Below are positions 1,303 to 31,622 of a stretch of 64,000 bases of DNA, one piece after another. The stretch covers positions 124,001 to 188,000 of the IMG/VR virus record IMGVR_UViG_3300035070_002626; one strand, written 5' to 3'. Under the pieces are notes generated by a model. That model saw only the letters and a list, made by a program, of their open reading frames with translations. It made no database searches and was not told where the DNA came from. Position 1 is the stretch's first letter, and every line of letters begins with the position of its first letter. The translations under genes and the position numbers were made by a program.

Positions 1303-2343
1303 TTAAGCAACTAGTTTTTCTTCGTTGTTGCTGTAATAATGTTGTAACAACATTGCGCTTGCTAGATTTTTGCACTTTGCTTCTACCATAATGTCTGCCC
1401 AGTGCCAGTGTGACAATACATAATCATTCAATGCATCATTAGGAAGGTAATCACTATGTGCTCGTAGCTTACCTCGGGCAATACCACTTTCCATCAGTGC
1501 TGCACGATCAGGGCGTGTGTGGGTATCAAGTGGCAGTAAGATTTGTTCTTGGCTTTGGCTGTAATGCATGGCTGGTCGCTCGCCACGCCAGCTGTCTACA
1601 ATGCGTTTAATACGGTCATCGTTGGCTTCAATGTACGAACCTTCACGTACCCAATGGTGATGTACATCTAGCACCAAAGCGAGATCGTTTGCAAGCTCAA
1701 GACTGTCGTCGATTCCCCATCTGTTTTCGTCGTTTTCGATTGTAATAGTGTTTCTGGCTTCCGGCGTGAAGCGTTTAATTGCGTCTTTGATACCGGCTGG
1801 ACCTTGTCGGCCTGAGATGTGTACGTTGCACTTGAAGTCTTGGAACTTCTTGCCGTAACCCATCCACCGTATGAGAGTGGCGTGATATTCAAATTCTTCT
1901 ATGCTCCGTTCTACAATTTCAGGATTATCACTTGCAAGCACAACAAATTGTCCTGGGTGCATGGATAGTCTAACATCAAGTGCTCGTGCTGTGTCACCTA
2001 CCATGCCATAGTGTTTTTCACCGTATGCAATCACATCTGGACGTTGCCAGAAGTAGCGCCATTCTGGGTGAGTAGCACAAGGAAGCTGGTTACTACCAAT
2101 TCGTACCATGCGTAACTCTGCAGGGAGGCTACCAACATACTCAACCAATCGTTTTGCTGCGGCAGCATTGTGAATCATTATATCCCACAAACGCTCTTCT
2201 GCTACTTCACGTGTTTGTCTGCCTAACCAAGTAACTGTTGTGCTGCGCTCCGTTAACGGGCGTTGCAATTCTTCAAGGATCTTTTTCTTTTGTGTTTGAT
2301 CTTCGTGCAAATACTTGCAAGCAAAGCCTATACGAGCAACCAT
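1303..2343 (-). CDS. uvsE: UV DNA damage endonuclease UvsE/UVDE
   Basis: RIGFAC, RLSMHPGQF, TIENDE, LVLDVHHHW, HYSQ, AHSDY, DIMVEAK motifs; AGGAGG RBS. Confidence 0.93.
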   Translation of the reverse strand: MVARIGFACKYLHEDQTQKKKILEELQRPLTERSTTVTWLGRQTREVAEERLWDIMIHNAAAAKRLVEYVGSLPAELRMVRIGSNQLPCATHPEWRYFWQRPDVIAYGEKHYGMVGDTARALDVRLSMHPGQFVVLASDNPEIVERSIEEFEYHATLIRWMGYGKKFQDFKCNVHISGRQGPAGIKDAIKRFTPEARNTITIENDENRWGIDDSLELANDLALVLDVHHHWVREGSYIEANDDRIKRIVDSWRGERPAMHYSQSQEQILLPLDTHTRPDRAALMESGIARGKLRAHSDYLPNDALNDYVLSHWHWADIMVEAKCKNLASAMLLQHYYSNNEEKLVA

Positions 2344-2351
2344 GGAACCTC

Positions 2352-2915
2352 CTAGGTATCTATGTCTAAGTTACCTAATAATTGTAACACATTCTCGTAA
2401 GTATCGCAAGAGATATTTTCCATATTTGCAAAAGATTTAGCCAGATCTTCTAGATGATCAATCACAACCCAGGTAGTGTCTGCGTTGTTTTTAATTACTC
2501 CGCTGGCTGCCGCCTGGTAATTCTTTTTAAGATGTCTAGCAGTTGGATCAGTGTCTGTTATTTCTTGCAAGTCAAATCCTAGCAATAGCACCAAGTCGCT
2601 TTTGCTAACAAGATGCATAGCAACAATATCTTCTTGGTTGTCGAACTCTGTTGGAAATTTCCCATCAAACACATTTACACCAGGAGGTCTTTCTAATGCT
2701 GCATAACTCTGTTGTGGTATGTAAAAGTTACATACGCCATGGAAGGCACGTTTAATTAGCTCACGTGCCTTTTCGTCATTGGCGCACAATACATTAGCAG
2801 TATTGTATAACCGCCAGGTTTTCCAGCTTCCCCAGGTGTTGCCAATGGCTTTTAGCTGCTCTGGTTTTGCTTTGTCATCTTTGTATTCTGCTGATATTAC
2901 CCAACTAACTTGCAT
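2352..2915 (-). CDS. Hypothetical protein, possibly a Maf/sialyltransferase-like fold
   Basis: TAATG coupling to the upstream gene at 2915; LVLLLGFDL motif. Confidence 0.5.
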   Translation of the reverse strand: MQVSWVISAEYKDDKAKPEQLKAIGNTWGSWKTWRLYNTANVLCANDEKARELIKRAFHGVCNFYIPQQSYAALERPPGVNVFDGKFPTEFDNQEDIVAMHLVSKSDLVLLLGFDLQEITDTDPTARHLKKNYQAAASGVIKNNADTTWVVIDHLEDLAKSFANMENISCDTYENVLQLLGNLDIDT

Positions 2916-3937
2916 TATGCTGATTTCAACTCCGTCCATCTAAATGCACCCAAACATAACCAGGCGAACGGTGCGCCTTGTTTATAGTTAGCATTAAACA
3001 CTAGATCACCTTTTGCACCTTCGTACCCAGGAGTTTCCGGCGATGTAGAAATTTTATTGCGACCAATTTGTAATTGTTTGACCCAAGTTAGTCCATCTTT
3101 GTTGATTGTTAATTGCTGTTGATTGTTGGTTACCAGGCTTAGGTTATGTGGTTTTGCTGTACCAATCTGCCCAGTATTTGCACTGTGCTTGCCTACTTCG
3201 ATGTTTACTTCGTTGTCCCATATGCTTAGTGCACTGGTGGGATTTGGAGTGTTAATACCCACTCTATGGTTCTTTACACTAAGATAAGTGTTTACTTGCA
3301 AATCATCAAGTTTGCCAACTTCGGTAATGTTGGTACGTTTAACGTGCGAACTAAGAGTGCCGTTATCAACTAGCAACTCGCCGCCGACGCTTAGTTGTTG
3401 TAAATCAATGCCATTTTGCATGCGTTCAAAAAGTGTGTCACTCATAGTTTCAACAAAATCATGTTTAAGTTTGTCTAGCGCATTTTTTTCAATAGTTTCG
3501 GCAAGTTCTACAAAACTTCTGTTGTTTACGTTGATGCGACCCTTGATTGCTAAATCGCCATCAATTGTAAGTGACCCGTGCATGTATGCATCTTGGGCAA
3601 TATCTAGTTCGCCTACGTCAATGCTGTCTGCACTTAGATGTTTTCTTACAACAACTAAACCATCTTCGACTGTGAGCTCTCCGTTAATGTCTTTAGTAAG
3701 TATACCTGCATTTTCAATAACTACTTCACGCAATACATCTTTGATGTTTTCTTGTCGAATTGTTTTGGTAATTCGATCACTCATTTCACGAGCAATGTGT
3801 GTTTGGATTTTTGCTAACCATTGTTCATCGAACAACAAGTTTTCAATAGTGTCCTCAACTAATTGTTCAACTGCTTGGTCAACAGACTGCTTGAGTTGAA
3901 CTTCAATTAAACTGTTGATTGCATTTTGGTCAATCAT
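2915..3937 (-). CDS. Putative virion/fibre-like protein
   Basis: N-terminal helical region followed by beta-rich fibre-type motifs (RVGINTPNP, LSLVTNNQQQLTI, GAKGDLVFN). Confidence 0.55.
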   Translation of the reverse strand: MIDQNAINSLIEVQLKQSVDQAVEQLVEDTIENLLFDEQWLAKIQTHIAREMSDRITKTIRQENIKDVLREVVIENAGILTKDINGELTVEDGLVVVRKHLSADSIDVGELDIAQDAYMHGSLTIDGDLAIKGRINVNNRSFVELAETIEKNALDKLKHDFVETMSDTLFERMQNGIDLQQLSVGGELLVDNGTLSSHVKRTNITEVGKLDDLQVNTYLSVKNHRVGINTPNPTSALSIWDNEVNIEVGKHSANTGQIGTAKPHNLSLVTNNQQQLTINKDGLTWVKQLQIGRNKISTSPETPGYEGAKGDLVFNANYKQGAPFAWLCLGAFRWTELKSA

Positions 3938-4850
3938 TTTCTCTCCAAGTGTCTAGTGTCACACAATGATGTCCGCCGCCTAGTGTTCTACTGTGTCGTA
4001 GGGTATGTGGTATAACTGTGAACTTGTGTTTCTCTAATGTATTTATAAGTTCAGTCTGGGCAGCATCCATTATTACGGTATCGCTATTAACGGCCAACAT
4101 GTTAAGACCAATCCACTTGCTAGCATATGGATATTCATGAAAGCTTTGTGGAACCATGTCGTTGACCCAAATAATGTCCCAATTTCTGATACTTGGTGGC
4201 AAATTATCCTTTGACTTTATGCGAGGCTGATTGCAAACCACGAGTCCTTCACGCAGCGGAACAATAGTACTGTCGATGTGTACACCAGCGTAGAAATTAA
4301 CTTTTTCAATGTTGATGTGCGAAAAGCGATCACACAACCAATCGTATGCAGATCTATTACCTGACTCGCTTTCAAGGTAAATCCAGGTATCACCTAGCCT
4401 GCATATGTTTGCAGCATCTAATGTCATGCCTTCGTTCCTTGGCATGTGAACAACAGTGTTATCACTTAGCATCGGGAGGTAACATTGTTCCTCAAGATCT
4501 CTACAAGGGTACATCATTGCTGGATCGAGTATCTTGTCTCCAGCAATTAGAAATCTATCACGTGGGCAATAATTATACATACCCCCTATTTCTTGAAAAT
4601 CAAGATCAGTTGGGCGATTAACCTTTACACTCTCGCCTTCAAGTAATTTAGTAAGAGCATCCAAATCTTCGTTTGCTTCATCAATGATCCAGCCTGGTAC
4701 TGCTCCACCAGGAACTGGAGTTTCTTTCCATAGTGTTTTTTCACTTTCGTTGGCAAACACTGGATCATCACTGGGCCAGTTAGCATGTGTAGCCACACCA
4801 ACATAGATCTCTCTTAATTGATCCCACTCATTGTAACTGTGAATTTTCAT
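3930..4850 (-). CDS. L-arginine-dependent amidinotransferase (StrB1/glycine amidinotransferase family)
   Basis: SYNEWDQL, CPRD, DAAN, HIDST, TLGGGHHCVTLD; Asp-His-Cys triad intact. Confidence 0.92.
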   Translation of the reverse strand: MKIHSYNEWDQLREIYVGVATHANWPSDDPVFANESEKTLWKETPVPGGAVPGWIIDEANEDLDALTKLLEGESVKVNRPTDLDFQEIGGMYNYCPRDRFLIAGDKILDPAMMYPCRDLEEQCYLPMLSDNTVVHMPRNEGMTLDAANICRLGDTWIYLESESGNRSAYDWLCDRFSHINIEKVNFYAGVHIDSTIVPLREGLVVCNQPRIKSKDNLPPSIRNWDIIWVNDMVPQSFHEYPYASKWIGLNMLAVNSDTVIMDAAQTELINTLEKHKFTVIPHTLRHSRTLGGGHHCVTLDTWREND

Positions 4851-5374
4851 TCTATAACTCCAGTTATTTGCAAACTGTATCTGTGCGTTTTACCAACGTT
4901 AGCAGCTAGGTGTTCAGTGTCATTTTGCCATATAAAATAATCACCAGCGTGCCATTTTGTTTGTGGTTCACCATCTATTTCAAACACGTGTCCACTTTCC
5001 CAGTCTTTCATAAAGAAGATTGCTCTATGTATAGTATCAGCATCATTGATATTGTGATACTTGATAAAACGTGCATAAGTGTCACTGTGTGTAGGGAGAC
5101 AGCAACCAGGTCCCATGCGGTATACACTCCAAGAAAAGTGTTTCCATGGTAATACAGTTTGAATTTTATCCATCCATTTGGGTGCAGGATTACGCATGTC
5201 ATACATGTCGCCTGTAAACTTGGTTTGTGTATAACCTAACTCTCTCCACTCAGCCAAGCTTACAGGATCATTGAAAGGCTCGTTGCTATAAGGCAAGTCT
5301 TCAAATGCATTTTGCCAGACTGGTGCTGTGCTGCCCTGCCACCACTTTTTACTAGGCTTGTCTTGTGTTTCCAT
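4847..5374 (-). CDS. 2OG-Fe(II) oxygenase / cupin-fold protein
   Basis: HSD (HxD) plus distal H (EHLAANVG) and RYSLQITG. Confidence 0.75.
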   Translation of the reverse strand: METQDKPSKKWWQGSTAPVWQNAFEDLPYSNEPFNDPVSLAEWRELGYTQTKFTGDMYDMRNPAPKWMDKIQTVLPWKHFSWSVYRMGPGCCLPTHSDTYARFIKYHNINDADTIHRAIFFMKDWESGHVFEIDGEPQTKWHAGDYFIWQNDTEHLAANVGKTHRYSLQITGVIE

Positions 5375-6584
5375 AATGTACTACTTCTATATCTTTCATT
5401 GTTTTAGGCAAGCGTCTCCATGGATCAACCACTGTGCTTCCACTAGGAAGCGGGCAATAGAAACTGTCGTCGCGAACATCACCGGTATAGCCGTATGTAA
5501 TGAATCTATTGTGTGCCATAAGCACTACACTTGCTTCATCAATACTTTCAACTACGTTGGTTTGATCATCAGCAAGTGGGTCTAAGTAAACCACACTATG
5601 CCCGAGTTCTTCTACATACCATCCAATTAATGTGCTGTAACTGCCAATACAAAACGGAACATCGGGTTTATAAGCTTTACCGTGAATTACAATTGGGCGA
5701 CCTTTACTGTGTTCAACTAAAAAATGTGCTAGATTTTTTGCTTGTACTTCCCTGGCACCCATGATTGTGTTAAACATATCATACCCAACATCATACTCTT
5801 CGGCCAGCCAACGCAGTGCAATATTATCACGTGGATGACATGCACCTGCATCCCCCATGCCTGCTGTCATGTATTTAGGACCCATGATACGCATTGTACT
5901 TTGTGCCAGTGCATCAGTAACAACATCAACATCAATGTTGCCAATTTTCATTGCAAAGTCTTGAATCATGTTAACCAAGCCAACTTTTGCACTAATAAAT
6001 GTGTTGTAGAAGATTTTAATTGCTTCGCACTCGTCCCATGTGCCTGTAACATATCTTGGATTATTCAGCATAAGTGGGCGATACAAATTAATAAGATCTC
6101 TCATCTCACTTGGGTCACCTGTTTCGGTGCCAATCATAACCATTTCTGGATTAGCAAAATCCCACTTAACACTACCCATTGCAATCAGATATGGATTGTA
6201 CAAGAATTGGTGGTTGCTGTCCAGCAAACTATAAAACTCACGGCGTGTTGTGCCCGGTAGTACTGTCGAAATAAGAACAACACGTTTTGGTTCTGTAGCA
6301 TGCTCGTTTACTAAACGGATAGCATCTTTAACGGCATCGTGGCCAAAGTCTTTTGGCTCCATGTGTGCACTGGGCGTACTACCATCGTACCCTTCTGCAT
6401 GTGGAGTTTGTACAGCAATAAAAATCCAATCGCTGTTGGTAATCATTTCTTCAGGGGTATTACAAACTTTTACCCTGTCGCTTGTGCGTGGGTAAATATC
6501 ATAACCACACACGTTATACTTTTCTGCCATTACTTCCGCACAATCGAGCCCAAGTTTGCCGAGCCCAATAAATCCAATATTCAT
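5352..6584 (-). CDS. ugd: UDP-glucose/GDP-mannose dehydrogenase family
   Basis: GLGKLG Rossmann motif, AVQTP, STVLPGT, IKIFYN, GACHPRD catalytic Cys, GKAYKP. Confidence 0.92.
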   Translation of the reverse strand: MNIGFIGLGKLGLDCAEVMAEKYNVCGYDIYPRTSDRVKVCNTPEEMITNSDWIFIAVQTPHAEGYDGSTPSAHMEPKDFGHDAVKDAIRLVNEHATEPKRVVLISTVLPGTTRREFYSLLDSNHQFLYNPYLIAMGSVKWDFANPEMVMIGTETGDPSEMRDLINLYRPLMLNNPRYVTGTWDECEAIKIFYNTFISAKVGLVNMIQDFAMKIGNIDVDVVTDALAQSTMRIMGPKYMTAGMGDAGACHPRDNIALRWLAEEYDVGYDMFNTIMGAREVQAKNLAHFLVEHSKGRPIVIHGKAYKPDVPFCIGSYSTLIGWYVEELGHSVVYLDPLADDQTNVVESIDEASVVLMAHNRFITYGYTGDVRDDSFYCPLPSGSTVVDPWRRLPKTMKDIEVVHYGNTRQA

Positions 6585-6603
6585 AATTAAGGTACCTTCC
6601 TAG

Positions 6604-7806
6604 ATGTCTATCCCTACTAATAATTTATACGATTTTGTCCACCAGGTGTTAGAAAGTAAGTTCTTTCTTCGCTACTTTTATCCCTGGGGAGAAAAAGATA
6701 TAGAAAATATAATCGAACACCCTAACAACAAGTTCAGTGCAGATATTGCCAAGACACTAATTGCTGCTAATTTAAATCCTGTACGGTATAGCCCAGTGAT
6801 ATTATGCCACGACCAAGAGCCGTTAGACTTTGATTTATATAGTGATCATATGCTGAAACTACTAGAGGACGACGATATACAACCATTGGTTAAGTACGGG
6901 GTTAAAGATTTGAATCTAAGATGGCGTTTTCCAAGAAGTAGTACTAATACTTGGATATTATTACATAGCGAATTAAATAGCGATCAAGTACAAAAATATA
7001 ATTATACAGGATTATTTAAATGTGCATACTGGTGGAGTCATGCGTTAATTGCCCGAGATTGGTATAGATTTGCACAGCATGACCAACAGCTCAACCAAAT
7101 CTTACCTAAAATTGCTAACTGGCTAGTTTATGCCAGGGCTACATCTGGAAAACGTGAGTACCGACAAGGTTTTCTAGAAAAGCTCAAAACTGTAAAGAAT
7201 GTGCAGTTCGGCAGTATCGACACAAGTAAAGTAGTTAGTAGTAATAGCAGTGCCGAGTACGAATGGAAAGACTATACACAAACAAATTGCAGTATTATAT
7301 TGGAAACTGTGTACGACGATCGCATACACTTAACCGAAAAGACACTGCGGCCAATTGCTTGCGGGCACCCTTTTATGATTCTTAGCGGTCCAGGGACATT
7401 AGCGTATTTGCGCAAGATGGGATTTAATACGTTTAGCCCACTTATTGACGAAAGTTACGATCTCGAAACAGATCCAGCTAAACGTATGCAAATGGTACTA
7501 GAAGAAATGCATAGGATCAACAACCTAAGCGACAGGTATCAACGATATATCTGGAAAGAATGTCAGGCAATAACCACATACAACAAGAATTATTTCTTTA
7601 GTAAAAAGTTTCAACAGAAGGTGGTTGCCGAACTAACAGACAATGTAAAGGCTGTTGGCATGCCAGCAGTTGACTGGAAACTTGTACAAAAATATCATCT
7701 AATGAGGGATACTAAAGAACGGCGTACTGCACCTGATAGAGTACCAACTATAAAATTGATAAAGCATTTACGCAGTGGCGGCACGATTGACAATTTTGTT
7801 ATATAA
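6604..7806 (+). CDS. Glycosyltransferase-like protein (GT10/GT-B-type C-terminus)
   Basis: ILET...LTEKTLRPI..GHPF...LRKMGFNTF..IDESYD motif typical of phage GT10-like proteins. Confidence 0.6.
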   Translation: MSIPTNNLYDFVHQVLESKFFLRYFYPWGEKDIENIIEHPNNKFSADIAKTLIAANLNPVRYSPVILCHDQEPLDFDLYSDHMLKLLEDDDIQPLVKYGVKDLNLRWRFPRSSTNTWILLHSELNSDQVQKYNYTGLFKCAYWWSHALIARDWYRFAQHDQQLNQILPKIANWLVYARATSGKREYRQGFLEKLKTVKNVQFGSIDTSKVVSSNSSAEYEWKDYTQTNCSIILETVYDDRIHLTEKTLRPIACGHPFMILSGPGTLAYLRKMGFNTFSPLIDESYDLETDPAKRMQMVLEEMHRINNLSDRYQRYIWKECQAITTYNKNYFFSKKFQQKVVAELTDNVKAVGMPAVDWKLVQKYHLMRDTKERRTAPDRVPTIKLIKHLRSGGTIDNFVI

Positions 7807-8394
7807 TTTTACATCCTTGGCAAGATAGTTATGAATCCATGCTTCGTTTTTAGTAAACCAGGCGTTATACTGTTCAGTAAACTCATCTGTGTACTTGGTG
7901 CGATTTTCGTGCATCCAAGGCAGATCAACTCTGCTGATTGTACTAAGATGTCGATGTAGGTCTCGCATTTGCCCAGTATGATAGTAATGATCAACTTTAA
8001 CTGGTGCTCTTTTAATAAACACATGTTGAGGTACAAAATGAGTTAATAGCTCTTCGTGCCGCTTAACTGGATTTTGTTTTATCAACAATTCTCCTATACT
8101 ATCAACAGTGTGTTCATAATGGAAGCGTTGTCCTAGGCCGTACGCAAACGCACTTTTTAATCTGCCGTATGGGTCACGTAATACTGTAAACTTAAAAGGG
8201 TCTTGTATGCGATAACTTTGTTCTTGTGTTTTAATTTTTCGTGCCCAATGAAGAACTGTAGTACTAACATTTTTAGGAATATTAACAAAATAAAAGTTTT
8301 CAACTCTGGGATATTCAGGCCAGCAGTAATAATCTATCACTGTGGGTTGCCAGAATTTATCCTTAATAAATAGTTTTTTTATGCCACTGAACAT
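7768..8394 (-). CDS. Sulfotransferase family 2 protein
   Basis: FVNIPKNVSTT (5'-PSB), VLRDPYGRLKSAF (3'-PB), HFVPQ. Confidence 0.8.
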   Translation of the reverse strand: MFSGIKKLFIKDKFWQPTVIDYYCWPEYPRVENFYFVNIPKNVSTTVLHWARKIKTQEQSYRIQDPFKFTVLRDPYGRLKSAFAYGLGQRFHYEHTVDSIGELLIKQNPVKRHEELLTHFVPQHVFIKRAPVKVDHYYHTGQMRDLHRHLSTISRVDLPWMHENRTKYTDEFTEQYNAWFTKNEAWIHNYLAKDVKLYNKIVNRAATA

Positions 8395-8720
8395 TACTTT
8401 TTGCTAGTGCCAGTATACAACCCAAACCATGCAGCACCTGCGCCAACAACAATACTAATTAAACCTGATTGTTCCATACTTGGATCTGCTAGGTTCATGT
8501 ACCAAATAACACATTTGTATAGTAGAATAATATAAACAGTTAAGAACAAACGTGGGAAAATTCTCCAAGCATCAACTGCTTTTGCTAAATGAATAAGTTT
8601 GGCATATGGATTAGGGCCCATATCTCTTACACTTGTATCTACTTCTAAATCTAATCTGACTTTGCGTGTTGTGCTGTCTTCTGTAGCAACAACAGTATCA
8701 TTATATTCTTCCATTGGCAT
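8394..8720 (-). CDS. Small two-TM membrane protein, holin-like
   Basis: DAWRIFPR followed by two hydrophobic segments; GGAG RBS. Confidence 0.55.
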   Translation of the reverse strand: MPMEEYNDTVVATEDSTTRKVRLDLEVDTSVRDMGPNPYAKLIHLAKAVDAWRIFPRLFLTVYIILLYKCVIWYMNLADPSMEQSGLISIVVGAGAAWFGLYTGTSKK

Positions 8721-9063: not shown

Positions 9064-9381
9064 ATGAACAATTTTGCTGATTGGGTCAACCAATATGGTT
9101 TTCCAATTGTTGCCGCAGTCGGGCTAGGCTATTTTATCTATTATATATGGGTGTGGGCAACCACAAAAGTTAAACCTGTAATAAGTGCAGCTATGGGAGA
9201 TTTGATTGCATTAGTTGATAGAATTAGAATGTTAGACAACGATATGATACGATTAAACAGCAAGTTGTCAATGGTGCTAGAACATCAAAGTAAAATAGAC
9301 AAAAAGCGTAGAGAAGAACTAGAAGAAATAGTAGCAAGATACCAGAGTAAAAGCGAATCATTTAACAGCACTGGCAAATAA
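9064..9381 (+). CDS. YvrJ-like TM/coiled-coil protein, paralog 2
   Basis: YGFPIVAA motif; aligns with the preceding ORF (DNRVQTMNNDLVKI vs VDRIRMLDNDMIRL). Confidence 0.65.
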   Translation: MNNFADWVNQYGFPIVAAVGLGYFIYYIWVWATTKVKPVISAAMGDLIALVDRIRMLDNDMIRLNSKLSMVLEHQSKIDKKRREELEEIVARYQSKSESFNSTGK

Positions 9382-22940: not shown

Positions 22941-24152
22941 TTAGGCTGCTATTTTTTGTGGATTGTTTACTAACTCGGGTGTAATTTCAACTTGAGTTAT
23001 TTTACTGTTAGCATACTCTTTAAGACTGTACATATGCGGCATTAGAATTCTTTCCAATTCAGCTTGCAAACTACGTGCACCTGTTTTGCGTTTATGTGCA
23101 TGTTGTGCAATCTCACGCAATGCATCTACACTAAATGTTAATGCAACACCATCAGTTTCAAACAAGTATGTGTATTGTGCTACTAAACTGTTGCGTATCT
23201 CTGTGAGTACATATACTAGCTGATCTTCGGTTAATTGCTCAAGAGCTACATTGGTCGGAAAACGTCCTACAAATTCCGGAATTAATCCAAATTTTACCAG
23301 ATCGTCGGGCTCAATATCTCCTAGGCTACCAGGTGTGTTGTCTTTGATTGTAACACCAAAGCCGATACCCGAGTCAGACGATGCTCTACGTTTTACTACA
23401 TCTTCGAGTCCAACAAACGCTCCGCCTGCAATAAACAATATATTTTTAGTGTCTATTTCGATCATTTCCGCTTGTGGGTTTTTCCTACCGACATTGCCAG
23501 CTGGTACACGACAAATTGTGCCTTCTACTAGTTTAAGCAATGCTTGCTGCACACCTTCGCCACTAACATCGCGAGTGATCGACGAACTTTCACTTTTACG
23601 TGATATCTTGTCAACTTCGTCTAAAAACACAATACCTCTTTGTGCTTTTTCAACATCCCCGTCTGCTGAGTTTAGCAACTTACCGATTAATGTTTCGACA
23701 TCGTCCCCAACATACCCAGCTTCGGTAATAGAAGTTGCATCCGCAATTGCAAATGGCACATCTAAAAATCGTGCTACACTTTTTGCTAACAATGTCTTAC
23801 CGCAGCCCGTTGGCCCAAGCAATAGTATATTGGCTTTGTCTAATTCTATCTCTGTTGATGTATTATTAATTCTTTTGTAATGATTAGCAACTGCTACCGA
23901 AAGCACAACTTTTGCCATTTCTTGACCAATCACGTATTTGTCAAGGAATTCTTTTAGCTCGACAGGGTCTATGTCATTGACATTATTTGCATGTACTGTA
24001 TTACTTGCTAGCTCTTGTAGTAAGTCTCCACATAGATCCACACATTCATTGCAGATAGCAACATTGTCGCCAACTATGAGCTTTGTTACACTGTTTTTAT
24101 CCTTATTACAAAAATTACATTTTTCGTATGCTAACATGGTATCCTCGGTCAT
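22941..24152 (-). CDS. clpX: ATP-dependent Clp protease ATP-binding subunit ClpX
   Basis: CNFC...CNEC zinc finger, GPTGCGKT, AGYVG, FLDEVDK, RDVSGEGVQQALLK, IGF loop, TGARSL. Confidence 0.96.
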   Translation of the reverse strand: MTEDTMLAYEKCNFCNKDKNSVTKLIVGDNVAICNECVDLCGDLLQELASNTVHANNVNDIDPVELKEFLDKYVIGQEMAKVVLSVAVANHYKRINNTSTEIELDKANILLLGPTGCGKTLLAKSVARFLDVPFAIADATSITEAGYVGDDVETLIGKLLNSADGDVEKAQRGIVFLDEVDKISRKSESSSITRDVSGEGVQQALLKLVEGTICRVPAGNVGRKNPQAEMIEIDTKNILFIAGGAFVGLEDVVKRRASSDSGIGFGVTIKDNTPGSLGDIEPDDLVKFGLIPEFVGRFPTNVALEQLTEDQLVYVLTEIRNSLVAQYTYLFETDGVALTFSVDALREIAQHAHKRKTGARSLQAELERILMPHMYSLKEYANSKITQVEITPELVNNPQKIAA

Positions 24153-29545: not shown

Positions 29546-29825
29546 TTATTACATCTGGACTACCCTGTGTACGAATATCAAAACACGTATCGATATTGCC
29601 AACAAAATTAATTGTTTGAAATTCTGCTAAAACACTGGGTGAGCCTAGTGAGGTTTTTGCAACACAATGTTTAGCACAAGGGCCAGGACCGCAGCATGGA
29701 TGCGGACTAACTGGTGTAAATTCAAGACACGCTGGTTGACCATTGATTAGTACACTCAGTGCACCTGGTCCTGTTGCAATGCCTCCCATGCTGTTTGCGT
29801 CACCTATTCTTACTGCCTGTGGCAT
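29532..29825 (-). CDS. PAAR-type spike tip protein (T4 gp5.4-like)
   Basis: QAVRIGD, SVLINGQPA, H..C, GSPSV, GSPDVIIG. Confidence 0.85.
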   Translation of the reverse strand: MPQAVRIGDANSMGGIATGPGALSVLINGQPACLEFTPVSPHPCCGPGPCAKHCVAKTSLGSPSVLAEFQTINFVGNIDTCFDIRTQGSPDVIIGAM

Positions 29826-29864
29826 ATTCATCCTCACTATTACAACAGTATTTATGGTGACTTT

Positions 29865-30155
29865 TTAGGCTGGTACAATACCCGAAGTGGTTGCCAAATA
29901 TTGTTTAGCAATATCTGCTTCTGTTTTTGCAACACAACTCACAGCATGTGCTTGCAATATAAACTTTCCTTCAGGATTTACGCCGAACATAAACGGTGCT
30001 AGTCCCAATCCTTGCTGTTGCGCAATCAAGCACATTGGCTTTTTTAAAGTGTAAGATGTAGCACTTTCGGCATCTAACCGTGCTACTAATTCTTCACCTG
30101 ATGATAACTTAAAAGAAACTGTGTCTCCAGTTTTATACGGTGTTTCGATGATCAT
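29865..30155 (-). CDS. Conserved phage protein, Sm-like fold suspected
   Basis: VSFKLSSGEELVARL...Y...TSGI pattern. Confidence 0.65.
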   Translation of the reverse strand: MIIETPYKTGDTVSFKLSSGEELVARLDAESATSYTLKKPMCLIAQQQGLGLAPFMFGVNPEGKFILQAHAVSCVAKTEADIAKQYLATTSGIVPA

Positions 30156-30241
30156 TTTTTTCTCGTTTTTCCAATTTTAGTTGCTTTTTTTGCAGCGGCT
30201 TTCATTTTAGTTTTAGTTGCTCGTGGTTTGCGTAATGCCAT
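30152..30241 (-). CDS. 29-aa highly basic peptide
   Basis: MALRKPRATKTKMKAAAKKATKIGKTRKK; TAATG overlap with grx and ATGA overlap with the next gene. Confidence 0.7.
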   Translation of the reverse strand: MALRKPRATKTKMKAAAKKATKIGKTRKK

Positions 30242-30495
30242 TATAACGAATGTTCTCCTGTGCCAGTATAATTTGTTTCTTCCAAATATTGCGGGAAGTC
30301 CGACCATCCGCCAATCTTTGTTCCGTTTACTTTAATTTGCGGAAAGGTGCGAGCTCCTGGAAACTTTTCGAGTACCTCGTCACGAGTAAAGTCTATATCT
30401 AGTTGATAGTACTTGTACTCAAGTTGTCGTTGTTCGCACAATGCCTTTGCTCTATCACAAAACGGGCATTGTGCTTTACCATATATTTCGATCAT
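30241..30495 (-). CDS. Glutaredoxin
   Basis: CPFC active site, TFPQI, IGG. Confidence 0.95.
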   Translation of the reverse strand: MIEIYGKAQCPFCDRAKALCEQRQLEYKYYQLDIDFTRDEVLEKFPGARTFPQIKVNGTKIGGWSDFPQYLEETNYTGTGEHSL

Positions 30496-31622
30496 AACGA
30501 GAACCCCTTAAAAGTGTCTGTACCAACGTCTTGTTTTGTACCGCCGCTTACATAACTTGTAATTTCAGTTTCTTGCGGTGCCACTTGTACTTCAGCACCG
30601 CTGATCCATTTTTGTGTCCACGGCAATGGATTTGCTTGTGGTGTTTGATATGGACTTTTTAGATTTACATTGGTCATTCGACGTGCACAAATCCATTCAA
30701 TGTATTCACCTAGTAGCTGTGCGTTAAGACCAATCATTGATCCATCTTTAAATAGATAATCAGCCCAAGCTTTTTCCTGATCCACAGCGTCAACAAACAT
30801 TTGAATACATGCTTCTTCTGTTTCTTCGGCAATTTTTACGTAATCAGGATCGTCTTTTTTGAGAATCTTTAGCAACATTTGTGTGCTTGCTAAATGCAAG
30901 TTTTCATCCCGTGCAATTAACTTGATAATCTTTGCATTGCCTTCCATTTGCTTCATTTCTGCAAATGCCCAGCTACATGCAAAGCTCACGTAGAAACGCA
31001 CACCTTCGAGGATGTTAACACTCATCAATGTAAGCCACAGTAGCTTCTTTAGTTCATAAAGATCAACTGTAATCTTCTTACCATTGACTGTATGCGTACC
31101 TTCGCCGAGCAACTTGTACCAACGTGTAGTTTCAATAAGGCCATCATAGTACTTAGAGATATCCCCAGCACAGTCTGCAATCTCTTCGATGTCCATCATC
31201 TCATCAAAGATTTTGCTAGGATTATTGTATACATTCCGAATAATATGTGTATAGCTGCGACTGTGGATAGTTTCACTGAATGTCCACGTTTGAATCCAGT
31301 TTTCAATCTCAGGTAAACTTACAATAGGAGCAAATGCTTCTACCGGAGCACGACCTTGTACACTGTCTAGTAGGATCTGACGCTTCAAGTTTGATGTAAA
31401 GATATGACGTTCGTGTTCACTAAGAGCTTTAAAGTCTTTGCTGTCTTTGGTTACATCAACTTCTTCAGGACGCCAAAAGAATCCTAATTGTTTGTCCGTA
31501 AGTCCATCAAAACTTTTGTACTTTAGCGTATCATAACGCTGAATCGTAGGCCCGCCTGTTGGATCTAGAAATGCTAATACTTTTGTATGGTCTGCTTTGT
31601 TCTCAGTGTTAAAAACGCTCAT
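30492..31622 (-). CDS. nrdB: Ribonucleotide reductase class Ia beta subunit
   Basis: FFWRPEEV, QILLDSVQ, ETIHSRSY, EGVRFYVSF, RDENLH, VAPQETE. Confidence 0.97.
   Translation of the reverse strand: MSVFNTENKADHTKVLAFLDPTGGPTIQRYDTLKYKSFDGLTDKQLGFFWRPEEVDVTKDSKDFKALSEHERHIFTSNLKRQILLDSVQGRAPVEAFAPIVSLPEIENWIQTWTFSETIHSRSYTHIIRNVYNNPSKIFDEMMDIEEIADCAGDISKYYDGLIETTRWYKLLGEGTHTVNGKKITVDLYELKKLLWLTLMSVNILEGVRFYVSFACSWAFAEMKQMEGNAKIIKLIARDENLHLASTQMLLKILKKDDPDYVKIAEETEEACIQMFVDAVDQEKAWADYLFKDGSMIGLNAQLLGEYIEWICARRMTNVNLKSPYQTPQANPLPWTQKWISGAEVQVAPQETEITSYVSGGTKQDVGTDTFKGFSL

What the first reader, a model, noticed from the sequence alone, without database searches (positions are those of the whole stretch)
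2352..8394. Phage-encoded amidinotransferase inside a sugar-modification cluster
Seen: coupled genes for a UDP-sugar dehydrogenase, a 2OG-Fe oxygenase, an amidinotransferase with an intact Cys-His-Asp triad, a fibre-like protein and an LLGFD-motif protein, flanked by GT10-like and sulfotransferase genes. Established: this family transfers an amidino group from arginine to glycine or to aminocyclitols (StrB1 in streptidine synthesis). Inference: a pathway making a guanidinylated, hydroxylated or sulfated glycan for virion or host-surface decoration (or a DNA hypermodification), which would be unusual chemistry for a phage.
Basis: partly seen in the sequence, partly recalled or inferred. Interest (0 to 1): 0.72.

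Follow-up and report, generated by a model that had tools for sequence, protein, structure and literature searches.

The report
Phage amidinotransferase in a sugar-tailoring module
A marine jumbo phage carries a streptomycin-type amidinotransferase locked into a conserved gene set with a UDP-sugar dehydrogenase, an iron/2-oxoglutarate oxygenase and a glycosyltransferase, which most likely builds a positively charged (guanidino-bearing) sugar for a glycan, a chemistry not yet described for any virus.

Summary
The window is part of a 300-kb marine jumbo myophage related to Methylophilales phage Melnitz and Pelagibacter phage HTVC008M. ORF 3930-4850(-) is a true StrB1-like amidinotransferase: PDB 1bwd scores E 7.8e-54, and the Asp145-His191-Cys296 triad and the arginine-binding residues are all intact.

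The gene is not isolated. In 84 of 84 related loci it sits beside the same small 2OG-Fe(II) oxygenase. A divergent UDP-sugar 6-dehydrogenase is present in 81 of 84 and a GT-B glycosyltransferase in 77 of 84. The trio also survives in a second gene order in T4-like phages.

Bdellovibrio genomes and two other phage types place homologous genes next to a short DegT-type aminotransferase, epimerases, radical SAM enzymes and further glycosyltransferases.

The fibre-like, LLGFD and sulfotransferase genes are accessory (44, 24 and 3 of 84 loci).

No entry enzyme for DNA-base hypermodification or aminocyclitol synthesis was found.

Best reading: amidination of an amino-sugar nucleotide, then glycosyl transfer to a virion or host-envelope acceptor. 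The product and target are inferred, not shown.

The parts
3930..4850 (-). StrB1-like L-arginine amidinotransferase (306 aa). Catalytic Asp145-His191-Cys296. Donor-binding Asp98, Asp193, Arg210 and Ser244.
   Evidence: PDB 1bwd at E 7.8e-54 with residue-by-residue alignment. These residues are invariant in 24 phage homologues. It forms a monophyletic phage clade with SH-aLRT 100.
4847..5374 (-). Small 2OG-Fe(II) oxygenase (175 aa, double-stranded beta-helix). Always immediately upstream of the amidinotransferase, overlapping it.
   Evidence: Marginal Pfam hits to Asp_Arg_Hydrox and 2OG-FeII_Oxy_3. Invariant H96-x-D98...H155...R165. Atlas structural neighbours are 2OG-FeII_Oxy_3 proteins. Present in 84/84 loci. 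30% identical to S-SCSM2R ORF308, which also precedes that phage's amidinotransferase.
5352..6584 (-). Divergent UDP-sugar 6-dehydrogenase (410 aa) with the catalytic Cys motif GACHPRD.
   Evidence: Pfam N-terminal and central domains score above cut-off, and phrog_9148 scores 8.5e-87. Aligned to solved UGDHs. Present in 81/84 loci at a median 71% identity. 47-51% identical to the dehydrogenases in the Bdellovibrio clusters.
6604..7806 (+). GT-B fold glycosyltransferase of no assigned CAZy family (400 aa), transcribed divergently from the dehydrogenase across a 19-bp gap.
   Evidence: AF2 model with pLDDT 85. All Foldseek PDB hits are GT-B enzymes. VIA-align gives T4 BGT Z 11.4 and GT10 FucT Z 10.5. 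Invariant E234-T235...H242-L243-T244-E245-K246. Present in 77/84 loci. At least 5 paralogues elsewhere in the genome.
2915..3937 (-). Accessory fibre-like protein (340 aa): N-terminal and central coiled coils plus a C-terminal beta domain. A possible glycosylation substrate or virion fibre.
   Evidence: AF2 model with pLDDT 74. Only weak fibre or tail-spike matches. Present in 44/84 loci at about 33% identity.
2352..2939 (-). Accessory 195-aa protein with an LLGFD motif. Relatives' models resemble Rossmann-like folds. Function unknown.
   Evidence: No Pfam, PHROG or NCBIfam hit. The Atlas gives a weak lead to MptE/Maf-like proteins at 0.88. Present in 24/84 loci.
7768..8394 (-). Accessory sulfotransferase-like protein (208 aa) with 5'-PSB (IPKNVSTT) and 3'-PB (RDPYGRLKS) motifs.
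   Evidence: Pfam Sulfotransfer_2 at 20.5 bits (cut-off 22) and phrog_3347 at 2.5e-4. Motifs read from the translation. Present in only 3/84 loci.
1303..2343 (-). UvdE UV-damage endonuclease. A conserved downstream neighbour that is probably functionally unrelated.
   Evidence: Pfam UvdE at 4.4e-38. Downstream of the module in 71/84 loci.

Best explanation
The amidinotransferase is one step of a phage-encoded nucleotide-sugar tailoring pathway.

Proposed sequence of steps:
1. The dehydrogenase oxidises a UDP-hexose or UDP-N-acetylhexosamine to the uronic acid.
2. An amino group is installed on the sugar. The candidates are the lineage's short DegT-type aminotransferase or the WbpB/WbpE-like pair encoded elsewhere in the genome. 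The 2OG-Fe(II) oxygenase either supplies an oxidation or hydroxylates the sugar.
3. The StrB1-like enzyme forms its usual Cys296 S-amidino intermediate from L-arginine and passes the amidino group to the sugar amine, giving a guanidino sugar and ornithine.
4. The GT-B enzyme transfers the finished cationic sugar onto a macromolecular acceptor, most likely a virion fibre or capsid protein, or else a host envelope glycan.

Shown here: the enzyme identities, the intact active sites, and the tight co-conservation of the four genes.

Inferred: the order of steps, the amino-sugar acceptor, the guanidino product and the target.
For: Identity of the enzyme
- It is a StrB1-type amidinotransferase. The catalytic triad and the arginine-binding Asp98, Asp193, Arg210 and Ser244 are intact.
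- It is far closer to StrB1, whose active site is open and takes a bulky acceptor (my recollection of the StrB1 structure paper), than to the glycine and polyamine enzymes: E 1e-54 against about 1e-23 to 1e-25.

Gene linkage
- In 84 loci chosen only by amidinotransferase homology, the oxygenase is present in 84, the dehydrogenase in 81 and the GT-B in 77, all in fixed order.
- In 23 loci chosen by the oxygenase, 21 carry an amidinotransferase and the other two are cut by contig ends. Six of these show a different order (AT-UGDH-oxygenase) with a 36%-identical amidinotransferase.
- In one such T4-like contig the run is 2OG oxygenase, short DegT, GT25, AT, UGDH, oxygenase.

Counterparts elsewhere
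- A Bdellovibrio chromosome and a Pseudobdellovibrionaceae MAG cluster an amidinotransferase (37% identity) with a dehydrogenase (47-51%), a p400-like GT-B, an SDR epimerase/dehydratase, a short DegT, radical SAM enzymes and GT2s.
- Cyanophage S-SCSM2R has short DegT, radical SAM, GT, oxygenase, AT and GT2 in a row. Campylobacter phage CP220 has its amidinotransferase among radical SAM enzymes and two glycosyltransferases.

Supporting genes in this phage
- It carries an orthologue of the short DegT (43% identity) next to a GalE-like epimerase and a GT1-like gene.
- It also carries a GFO/IDH/MocA-DegT pair resembling WbpB/WbpE, three further amidinotransferase-like paralogues and at least 5 further p400-like GT-B genes.
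- The short DegT is present in 7 of 7 amidinotransferase-bearing relatives that are at least 90% complete.
Against: - There is no biochemical or mass-spectrometric evidence for any step.
- In this genome the aminotransferase is about 80 kb away, so its link to the module is by analogy with other genomes. Its presence in all complete relatives may only reflect lineage-core status.
- The dehydrogenase's sugar specificity is not resolved. It scores below the TIGR03026 cut-off and its UDP-binding domain is weak.
- No natural guanidino-sugar glycan turned up in the literature search, so there is no precedent for the proposed product.
- The glycosyltransferase's acceptor is unknown, and its closest structural neighbour is a DNA glucosyltransferase.
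- The AT-oxygenase complex prediction gave no answer.
- Lipid-carrier, flippase and polymerase genes were not searched for.
Confidence: 0.55

Rival explanations
1. DNA hypermodification. The GT-B enzyme glycosylates phage DNA, and the dehydrogenase, oxygenase and amidinotransferase tailor the attached sugar or a base side chain. The result would be guanidinylated DNA that resists host nucleases.
For: - The best structural neighbour of the GT-B is T4 beta-glucosyltransferase, Z 11.4.
- Bacillus phage SP-15, whose DNA is known to me to carry glucuronate-containing hypermodified bases, also encodes a UGDH.
- Campylobacter phage CP220, from a group I recall as having modified guanine, carries an amidinotransferase among radical SAM enzymes.
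Against: - The 86%-complete genome has no thymidylate-synthase-family hydroxymethylase and no TGT/DpdA, and it does encode ThyX. No TET/JBP hit was found either, but that search's control genomes also gave no hit, so it is uninformative.
- The fucosyltransferase and exostosin folds score nearly as well as T4 BGT, Z 10.5 and 10.0.
- The genome holds at least six paralogous GT-B genes plus DegT, epimerase and carbamoyltransferase genes typical of glycan assembly.
- The cellular counterpart clusters in Bdellovibrio carry GT2 enzymes.
Confidence: 0.12
2. Small-molecule auxiliary metabolism. The enzyme makes a free guanidino compound (guanidinoacetate, homoarginine or an amidino-polyamine as HsvA does), or runs in reverse to regenerate arginine. 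On this reading the adjacency to sugar genes is only synteny.
For: - The family includes glycine, lysine and polyamine amidinotransferases, and HsvA scores E 3e-25.
- S-adenosylmethionine decarboxylase genes lie within a few kb in related phages, which hints at polyamine metabolism.
- The core four-gene module carries no aminotransferase of its own.
Against: - The linkage to the dehydrogenase and oxygenase survives a rearrangement and divergence to 36% identity.
- The linkage recurs in Bdellovibrio, S-SCSM2R and CP220, each time with glycosyltransferases.
- The enzyme is much closer to StrB1 than to AGAT or HsvA.
Confidence: 0.15
3. A diffusible aminoglycoside-like guanidino glycoside. The phage makes a small secreted or intracellular streptomycin-like compound, as the S-SCSM2R authors suggested when they labelled these as 'antibiotic synthesis genes'.
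For: - The set recalls aminoglycoside pathways: StrB1-like enzyme, DegT-type aminotransferases, radical SAM enzymes, GT-B transferases and an NTP-transferase/APH-like kinase.
- The S-SCSM2R paper makes this suggestion (PMC12801897).
Against: - There is no 2-deoxy-scyllo-inosose/DHQ-synthase-type gene and no myo-inositol-phosphate synthase gene in the genome.
- To my knowledge a UDP-sugar 6-dehydrogenase is not part of known aminoglycoside routes.
- No export or self-resistance logic is evident.
Confidence: 0.06
4. The pentein-fold enzyme is a hydrolase (a deiminase or dihydrolase acting on arginine, agmatine or a methylarginine) and not a transferase.
For: Automatic annotations call many homologues 'N-dimethylarginine dimethylaminohydrolase'. 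NCBIfam gives faint DDAH and arginine dihydrolase hits at E 0.01-0.07.
Against: Those hits are far below cut-off (15 bits against 300) and cover only the C-terminal Cys loop. The full-length match to StrB1 is 186 bits.
Confidence: 0.04

Closest known systems
StrB1, L-arginine:inosamine-phosphate amidinotransferase of Streptomyces griseus (PDB 1bwd)
   Same: It is the best solved relative, at E 7.8e-54. The Cys-His-Asp triad and the arginine-binding residues are identical, and the loop before the catalytic His has StrB1-like length.
   Different: The phage enzyme is 306 aa against 348 aa and lacks about 34 residues that correspond to StrB1 139-172. It forms its own long-stemmed clade outside the actinomycete StrB1 clade. 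No aminocyclitol pathway genes are present.
Pseudomonas aeruginosa Wbp pathway (WbpA/B/E/D/I plus WbpG) to 2,3-diamino-mannuronic acids carrying an acetamidino group (from my own knowledge)
   Same: It starts from a UDP-sugar 6-dehydrogenase and uses a GFO/IDH/MocA oxidase with a DegT aminotransferase. It yields an amino uronic acid that ends up with an amidine-type cationic group. The phage encodes homologues of all three enzyme types.
   Different: In that pathway the amidine is made by an asparagine-synthase-like amidotransferase acting on an N-acetyl group. It is not made by a pentein amidinotransferase using arginine. Here the product would be a guanidine, not an acetamidine.
Glycan ('LPS-like') gene clusters of pelagimyophages and cyanomyophages (HTVC008M, Bellamy, S-SCSM2R)
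   Same: These are the same phage supergroup. They have orthologous UGDH (48-57% identity) embedded among glycosyltransferases, carbamoyltransferase, methyltransferase and 2OG oxygenases. The genes have been described as auxiliary LPS genes (PMC7029224).
   Different: HTVC008M and Bellamy pair the UGDH with a NadE-like enzyme and a carbamoyltransferase, not with an amidinotransferase. The AT-oxygenase-UGDH-GT-B module is not mentioned in that paper.
Amidinotransferase gene clusters of Campylobacter phage CP220 and of Bdellovibrio sp. HCB2-146
   Same: In both, the amidinotransferase is flanked by radical SAM enzymes and glycosyltransferases. The Bdellovibrio cluster also shares the dehydrogenase, the GT-B and the short DegT.
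   Different: No 2OG oxygenase homologue was detected there. Both clusters are themselves uncharacterised.
T4 beta-glucosyltransferase (GT63) and H. pylori alpha-1,3-fucosyltransferase (GT10)
   Same: They share the GT-B fold and are the top structural neighbours of the 400-aa protein, Z 11.4 and 10.5. The protein also has an E...TEK-type motif in its C-terminal domain.
   Different: Sequence identity is only 9-11%, there is no Pfam hit to either family, and the donor and acceptor are unknown.

Membership tests
Amidinotransferase family (AGAT/StrB1; pentein superfamily) | Full-length sequence homology to characterised members | tested here: met
   1bwd at E 7.8e-54 (186 bits), matched in two stretches covering residues 5-128 and 139-303. 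HsvA, SxtG and AGAT score 1e-23 to 1e-25.
Amidinotransferase family (AGAT/StrB1; pentein superfamily) | Cys-His-Asp catalytic triad | tested here: met
   Asp145, His191 and Cys296 align with StrB1 Asp179, His227 and Cys332. They are invariant in the phage family.
Amidinotransferase family (AGAT/StrB1; pentein superfamily) | Arginine-donor binding residues (StrB1 Asp108, Asp229 and Arg246, and the Ser of the S-x-W loop) | tested here: met
   Asp98, Asp193, Arg210 and Ser244 are conserved in alignment. The roles of these residues are taken from my knowledge of the AGAT and StrB1 structures.
Amidinotransferase family (AGAT/StrB1; pentein superfamily) | Pfam PF02274 match above the gathering score | tested here: not met
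   No Pfam family at E <= 0.01. Only 1 of the 120 listed homologues carries PF02274. That model is centred on arginine deiminases, so this failure is weak evidence.
Amidinotransferase family (AGAT/StrB1; pentein superfamily) | Amidino transfer from L-arginine to an amine, with release of ornithine | not testable with these tools
   Needs an enzyme assay.
StrB1 orthologue (streptidine/aminocyclitol pathway) | Genomic company of inositol or aminocyclitol biosynthesis genes | tested here: not met
   No DHQ-synthase-type gene and no myo-inositol-phosphate synthase gene in the 86%-complete genome. In the tree the phage clade lies outside the Streptomyces StrB1 clade.
UDP-glucose/GDP-mannose dehydrogenase family | NAD-binding and central domains, with the catalytic Cys | tested here: met
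   PF03721 scores 50.8 bits (cut-off 27) and PF00984 scores 57.6 bits (cut-off 25.4). 'GACHPRD' aligns with 'GGSCFPKD' of 4a7p.
UDP-glucose/GDP-mannose dehydrogenase family | Equivalog-level assignment of the sugar substrate | tested here: not met
   TIGR03026 scores 130.5 bits (cut-off 189.8), and all equivalog models are far below cut-off. The UDP-binding domain scores 16.8 bits (cut-off 30).
2OG-Fe(II) oxygenase superfamily | His-x-Asp...His iron triad plus the 2OG-binding Arg on a double-stranded beta-helix | tested here: met
   H96, D98, H155 and R165 are invariant in 32 sequences. Atlas structural neighbours are 2OG-FeII_Oxy_3 proteins with TM 0.69-0.73. Pfam scores are just under cut-off.
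Glycosyltransferase family GT10 (fucosyltransferase) | Sequence membership (PF00852) and a GT-B fold | tested here: inconclusive
   The GT-B fold is clear. No member of the 50-sequence family hits PF00852. T4 BGT scores slightly higher than GT10 structures. The Atlas similarity to GT10 is only 0.81-0.82.
Sulfotransferase (Sulfotransfer_2 / Gal-3-O-sulfotransferase-like) | PAPS-binding 5'-PSB and 3'-PB motifs and a family-level score | tested here: inconclusive
   Both motifs are present in the translation. Pfam gives 20.5 bits against a cut-off of 22, and PHROG gives 2.5e-4.

The most novel reading that the evidence does not exclude
A globally distributed lineage of 300-360 kb marine and freshwater jumbo phages, along with some T4-like cyanophages, makes a guanidino-substituted (arginine-mimicking, permanently cationic) sugar. 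The phages then attach it to their own virion proteins or to the host envelope. This would be the first natural guanidino-glycan outside aminoglycoside-type natural products, and a new enzymatic use of the StrB1 amidinotransferase family.
Probability: 0.35. Interest if true: 0.82.

Novelty: new variant of a known kind. Interest (0 to 1): 0.66.

Why it matters
- Phage glycan genes are usually written off as generic 'LPS-like' auxiliary genes. Here one such set has a defined, tightly conserved four-enzyme core with an unusual catalyst.
- If the core makes a guanidino sugar, it adds a new building block to glycobiology. It would also extend a family known from creatine, toxin and streptomycin biosynthesis to a new acceptor class.
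- It offers a plausible way for abundant marine jumbo phages to change the charge of their fibres or of the host surface, which would affect adsorption, superinfection exclusion or protection from proteases.
- The hypothesis can be tested directly, because the cultured Synechococcus phage S-SCSM2R carries the same oxygenase-amidinotransferase pair.

Tried and rejected
- **Megablast against GenBank phages.** 20 kb of the window gave no match. tblastn with the 400-aa GT-B also gave none.
- **Pfam scan of 50 GT-B family members.** Only chance hits.
- **Oxygenase homologues in CP220 and Bdellovibrio.** hhalign of the oxygenase family against CP220 gp085 and the Bdellovibrio 161-aa ORF showed no relationship. 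BLASTP against HTVC008M gp163 showed none either.
- **AT-oxygenase complex prediction.** The verdict was 'no answer' (score 0.10), so it counts neither for nor against binding.
- **Promoter and terminator scan.** Counts were no higher than in shuffled sequence, so it was not used.
- **Metatranscriptomes.** Four RNA libraries hold 90-95% identical relatives. One 5.7-kb contig spans genes on both strands, so DNA carry-over cannot be excluded and transcription is not shown.
- **DNA-modification entry enzymes.** Thymidylate-synthase family and TGT are absent, and a TET/JBP search found nothing but had no positive control.
- **Aminocyclitol entry enzymes.** DHQ-synthase type and inositol-phosphate synthase are absent.
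- **Tree.** The backbone is unresolved, so no donor lineage for the phage amidinotransferase can be named.
- **Literature.** No paper combines amidinotransferase, UDP-glucose dehydrogenase and glycosyltransferase, and none describes a natural guanidino sugar glycan.

Full report
**What the window is.** The window is bases 124,001-188,000 of a 299,910-bp IMG/VR virus record that CheckV estimates to be 86% complete. It encodes class Ia ribonucleotide reductase, a DnaB-type helicase, a primase, further helicases, a tail-spike-like protein and virion proteins. A 679-aa cyclase-domain protein is 53% identical to one in Methylophilales phage Melnitz and 34% identical to one in Pelagibacter phage HTVC008M. 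Near-identical DNA occurs in many seawater and marine metagenomes from different studies. Relatives that carry the same module are 316-364 kb long, and two have terminal repeats. This is therefore a marine jumbo myophage of the pelagimyophage/cyanomyophage supergroup. 'Phage-encoded' is correct.

**Checking the observation.** The minus strand carries overlapping ORFs at 2352-2939, 2915-3937, 3930-4850, 4847-5374 and 5352-6584. ORF 3930-4850 has no Pfam hit at E 0.01. Against PDB sequences, however, it matches StrB1 (1bwd) at 7.8e-54, well ahead of HsvA (3e-25), SxtG (2e-23) and AGAT (4e-23).

Counting along that alignment puts Asp145, His191 and Cys296 opposite StrB1 Asp179, His227 and Cys332. 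Asp98, Asp193, Arg210 and Ser244 fall opposite the residues that bind the arginine donor in AGAT and StrB1 (the residue roles are from my knowledge of those structures). All seven are invariant in 24 phage homologues.

The other genes check out as follows:
- The 410-aa protein is a divergent member of the UDP-glucose/GDP-mannose dehydrogenase family, and its catalytic cysteine motif is aligned.
- The 175-aa protein scores just under the Pfam cut-offs, but it has an invariant His-x-Asp...His...Arg motif and 2OG-oxygenase structural neighbours.
- The divergently transcribed 400-aa protein has no family hit. It folds with confidence (pLDDT 85) as a GT-B glycosyltransferase. Its best neighbours are T4 beta-glucosyltransferase (Z 11.4), GT10 fucosyltransferase (Z 10.5) and exostosin (Z 10.0).
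- The 208-aa protein is a borderline sulfotransferase with both PAPS-binding motifs.
- The 340-aa protein is built of coiled coils plus a C-terminal beta domain and resembles fibres only weakly.
- The LLGFD protein matches no named family, and the nearest leads are Rossmann-like folds.

**Which genes belong together.** I fetched 80 IMG/VR loci and 4 other contigs by amidinotransferase homology alone (60-100% identity) and asked which window genes recur nearby.

| Gene | Loci with it (of 84) | Note |
|---|---|---|
| 2OG oxygenase | 84 | always directly upstream, overlapping |
| Dehydrogenase | 81 | median 71% identity |
| GT-B | 77 | divergent strand |
| UvdE | 71 | downstream |
| Fibre-like | 44 | |
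| LLGFD | 24 | |
| Sulfotransferase | 3 | |
| Small membrane protein at 8394-8720 | 0 | |

Sampling from the oxygenase side gave the same result. Of 23 loci, 21 carry an amidinotransferase and the other two are cut by contig ends. Six loci have a different order (amidinotransferase, dehydrogenase, oxygenase) with an amidinotransferase only 36% identical. One of these is a T4-like contig in which the run reads 2OG oxygenase, short DegT-type aminotransferase, GT25, amidinotransferase, dehydrogenase, oxygenase, and is followed by T4 neck genes. The core unit is therefore GT-B / dehydrogenase / oxygenase / amidinotransferase. The fibre-like, LLGFD and sulfotransferase genes are accessories.

**Counterparts elsewhere.** A scan of one genome per prokaryotic species found five MAG contigs carrying the phage-type module, which are probably phage DNA binned into MAGs. 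Below these there is a gap down to 33-40% identical, roughly 335-aa StrB1-like proteins.

Two of those cellular loci are informative: a Bdellovibrio chromosome and a Pseudobdellovibrionaceae MAG. In both, the amidinotransferase clusters with the following genes:
- a dehydrogenase 47-51% identical to the phage one;
- a p400-like GT-B;
- an SDR epimerase/dehydratase;
- a short (222-aa) DegT-type protein;
- radical SAM enzymes;
- GT2 transferases (in the MAG cluster).

Cyanophage S-SCSM2R has short DegT, radical SAM, GT, oxygenase (30% identical to the window's), amidinotransferase (36% in the alignment) and GT2 in a row. Campylobacter phage CP220 has its amidinotransferase among radical SAM enzymes and two glycosyltransferases. 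In a maximum-likelihood tree the jumbo-phage enzymes form one clade (SH-aLRT 100) on a long stem. S-SCSM2R groups with the Bdellovibrio enzymes. The Streptomyces StrB1 clade is separate, and the backbone is unresolved.

**The rest of the genome.** The same phage encodes the following:
- an orthologue of the short DegT (43% identity) next to a GalE-like epimerase and a GT1-like gene;
- a GFO/IDH/MocA oxidoreductase next to a full-length DegT, an arrangement that recalls WbpB/WbpE;
- a second, shorter dehydrogenase with an SDR, a DegT and a nucleotidyltransferase/kinase just beyond the window;
- a carbamoyltransferase and an FkbM methyltransferase;
- at least five radical SAM enzymes;
- at least five further p400-like GT-B genes;
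- three more amidinotransferase-like paralogues that keep the cysteine loop.

Two of those paralogues resemble S-SCSM2R ORF266, a protein reported in that phage's virion proteome (PMC12801897). The short DegT is present in all seven amidinotransferase-bearing relatives that are at least 90% complete.

By contrast, the genome has no thymidylate-synthase-family hydroxymethylase and no TGT/DpdA, and it does have ThyX. A TET/JBP search also found nothing, but its control genomes gave no hit either, so that result is uninformative. It also lacks DHQ-synthase-type and inositol-phosphate synthase genes.

**Most likely mechanism.**
- *Shown:* the identities of the four enzymes, their intact catalytic residues, and their persistent linkage.
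- *Established for the family:* arginine amidinates the active-site cysteine, and the amidino group is then passed to a primary amine.
- *Inferred:* the amine is on a sugar nucleotide.

The proposed route is as follows. The dehydrogenase produces a uronic acid. A DegT-type enzyme adds an amino group after an oxidation supplied by an SDR, a GFO-type oxidase, a radical SAM enzyme or the 2OG oxygenase. The amidinotransferase converts that amine into a guanidine. The GT-B enzyme then transfers the cationic sugar.

Two points favour a bulky acceptor. The enzyme is much closer to StrB1, whose active site is open (my recollection of the structure paper), than to the glycine enzymes. It also lacks a further 34 residues or so.

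The target is undecided. I favour virion proteins or the host envelope for three reasons: the abundance of glycan-type genes, the optional fibre-like gene inside the operon, and the absence of DNA-modification entry enzymes. I give this overall reading 0.55.

**Rivals.**
- DNA hypermodification: 0.12.
- A free guanidino metabolite or polyamine: 0.15.
- An aminoglycoside-like small molecule: 0.06.
- A hydrolase role: 0.04.

**Comparison with what is known.**
- Phage amidinotransferase genes have been annotated before, in CP220 in 2010 and in S-SCSM2R in 2025, where they were labelled 'antibiotic synthesis' genes. Neither has functional data.
- Pelagimyophage genomics noted UGDH, glycosyltransferases, radical SAM proteins and an Asp/Asn beta-hydroxylase-like core gene as LPS-type auxiliary genes. 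It did not note an amidinotransferase.
- The closest chemical analogy I know is the Pseudomonas Wbp route to acetamidino-substituted diamino uronic acids, but there the amidine is made by an unrelated amidotransferase.
- I found no report of a natural guanidino-sugar glycan.

**Verdict.** I class it as a new variant of a known kind: a phage glycan-tailoring cluster with a conserved, uncharacterised amidinotransferase core. There is a realistic chance (about 0.35) that it makes a new kind of sugar.

**Limits.**
- Everything beyond enzyme identity and gene linkage is inference.
- The complex prediction gave no answer.
- Transcription is not demonstrated.
- The dehydrogenase's substrate and the transferase's acceptor are unknown.

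Noticed in passing
G000:C1:3574-4599(-), 29559-30575(-) and about 295803-296792(+), all outside the window: The same phage genome has three further amidinotransferase-like paralogues that keep the Cys loop. Two of them resemble S-SCSM2R ORF266 (about 30% identity), which was reported in that phage's virion proteome. One sits next to two p400-like GT-B genes, a carbamoyltransferase and an FkbM methyltransferase. Another sits next to three radical SAM genes at the contig end.
   Followed up: partly
L121:5870-16928 (Bdellovibrio sp. HCB2-146 chromosome) and L174:134-10711 (Pseudobdellovibrionaceae MAG): These are uncharacterised bacterial clusters. They combine a StrB1-like amidinotransferase, a phage-like UGDH, a p400-like GT-B, an SDR, a short 222-aa DegT, one to three radical SAM enzymes and, in L174, GT2 transferases. 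They look like a cellular counterpart of the phage module.
   Followed up: partly
L097-L101 (MAG contigs labelled Bacteroidetes UBA11400, Terrimicrobiaceae, Haliscomenobacter sp. EUL_031 x2, Legionella sp.): These contigs carry the phage-type module (amidinotransferase 57-66% identical, with oxygenase, UGDH, GT-B and UvdE). They nest inside the phage clade. They are probably phage DNA binned into bacterial MAGs. They could also be a host hint.
   Followed up: partly
window:9681-11720(-): A 679-aa protein annotated in relatives as having an adenylate/guanylate cyclase catalytic domain. It is 53% identical to Melnitz and 34% identical to HTVC008M, and it is a conserved neighbour in 22 of the related loci.
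   Followed up: no
window:8780-9061(+) and 9064-9381(+): Two small adjacent paralogous ORFs of 93 and 105 aa (22% identical to each other), conserved in 24 of the related loci. Function unknown.
   Followed up: no
L004 and L007 (276-kb and 350-kb relatives), within 8 kb of the module: Relatives encode ClpX-like and ClpS proteins, ribosomal protein S21, HSP20, SAM decarboxylase and either ClpP or Cpn10/Cpn60. One also has an isocitrate lyase/PEP-mutase-family gene with a class II aldolase. The window itself has a ClpX-like AAA protein at 22941-24152(-).
   Followed up: no
window:310-1104(+): A class 3 lipase/esterase gene (Pfam Lipase_3 at 7e-20) lies next to the UvdE gene. It is present near the module in only 7 of 84 related loci.
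   Followed up: no
window:2352-8351, laid on RNA runs X17-X20: Marine and salt-marsh metatranscriptome libraries contain contigs 90-95% identical to the whole region. One is a 5.7-kb contig spanning genes on both strands, which looks more like DNA carry-over than a single transcript.
   Followed up: partly
L088 (Synechococcus phage Bellamy) and L089 (HTVC008M): Orthologues of the window's UGDH (57% and 48% identity) sit in a different conserved set: Nol-like carbamoyltransferase, NadE-like enzyme, methyltransferase and UGDH. The NadE-like enzyme suggests that in those phages the uronic acid is amidated and not paired with an amidinotransferase.
   Followed up: no
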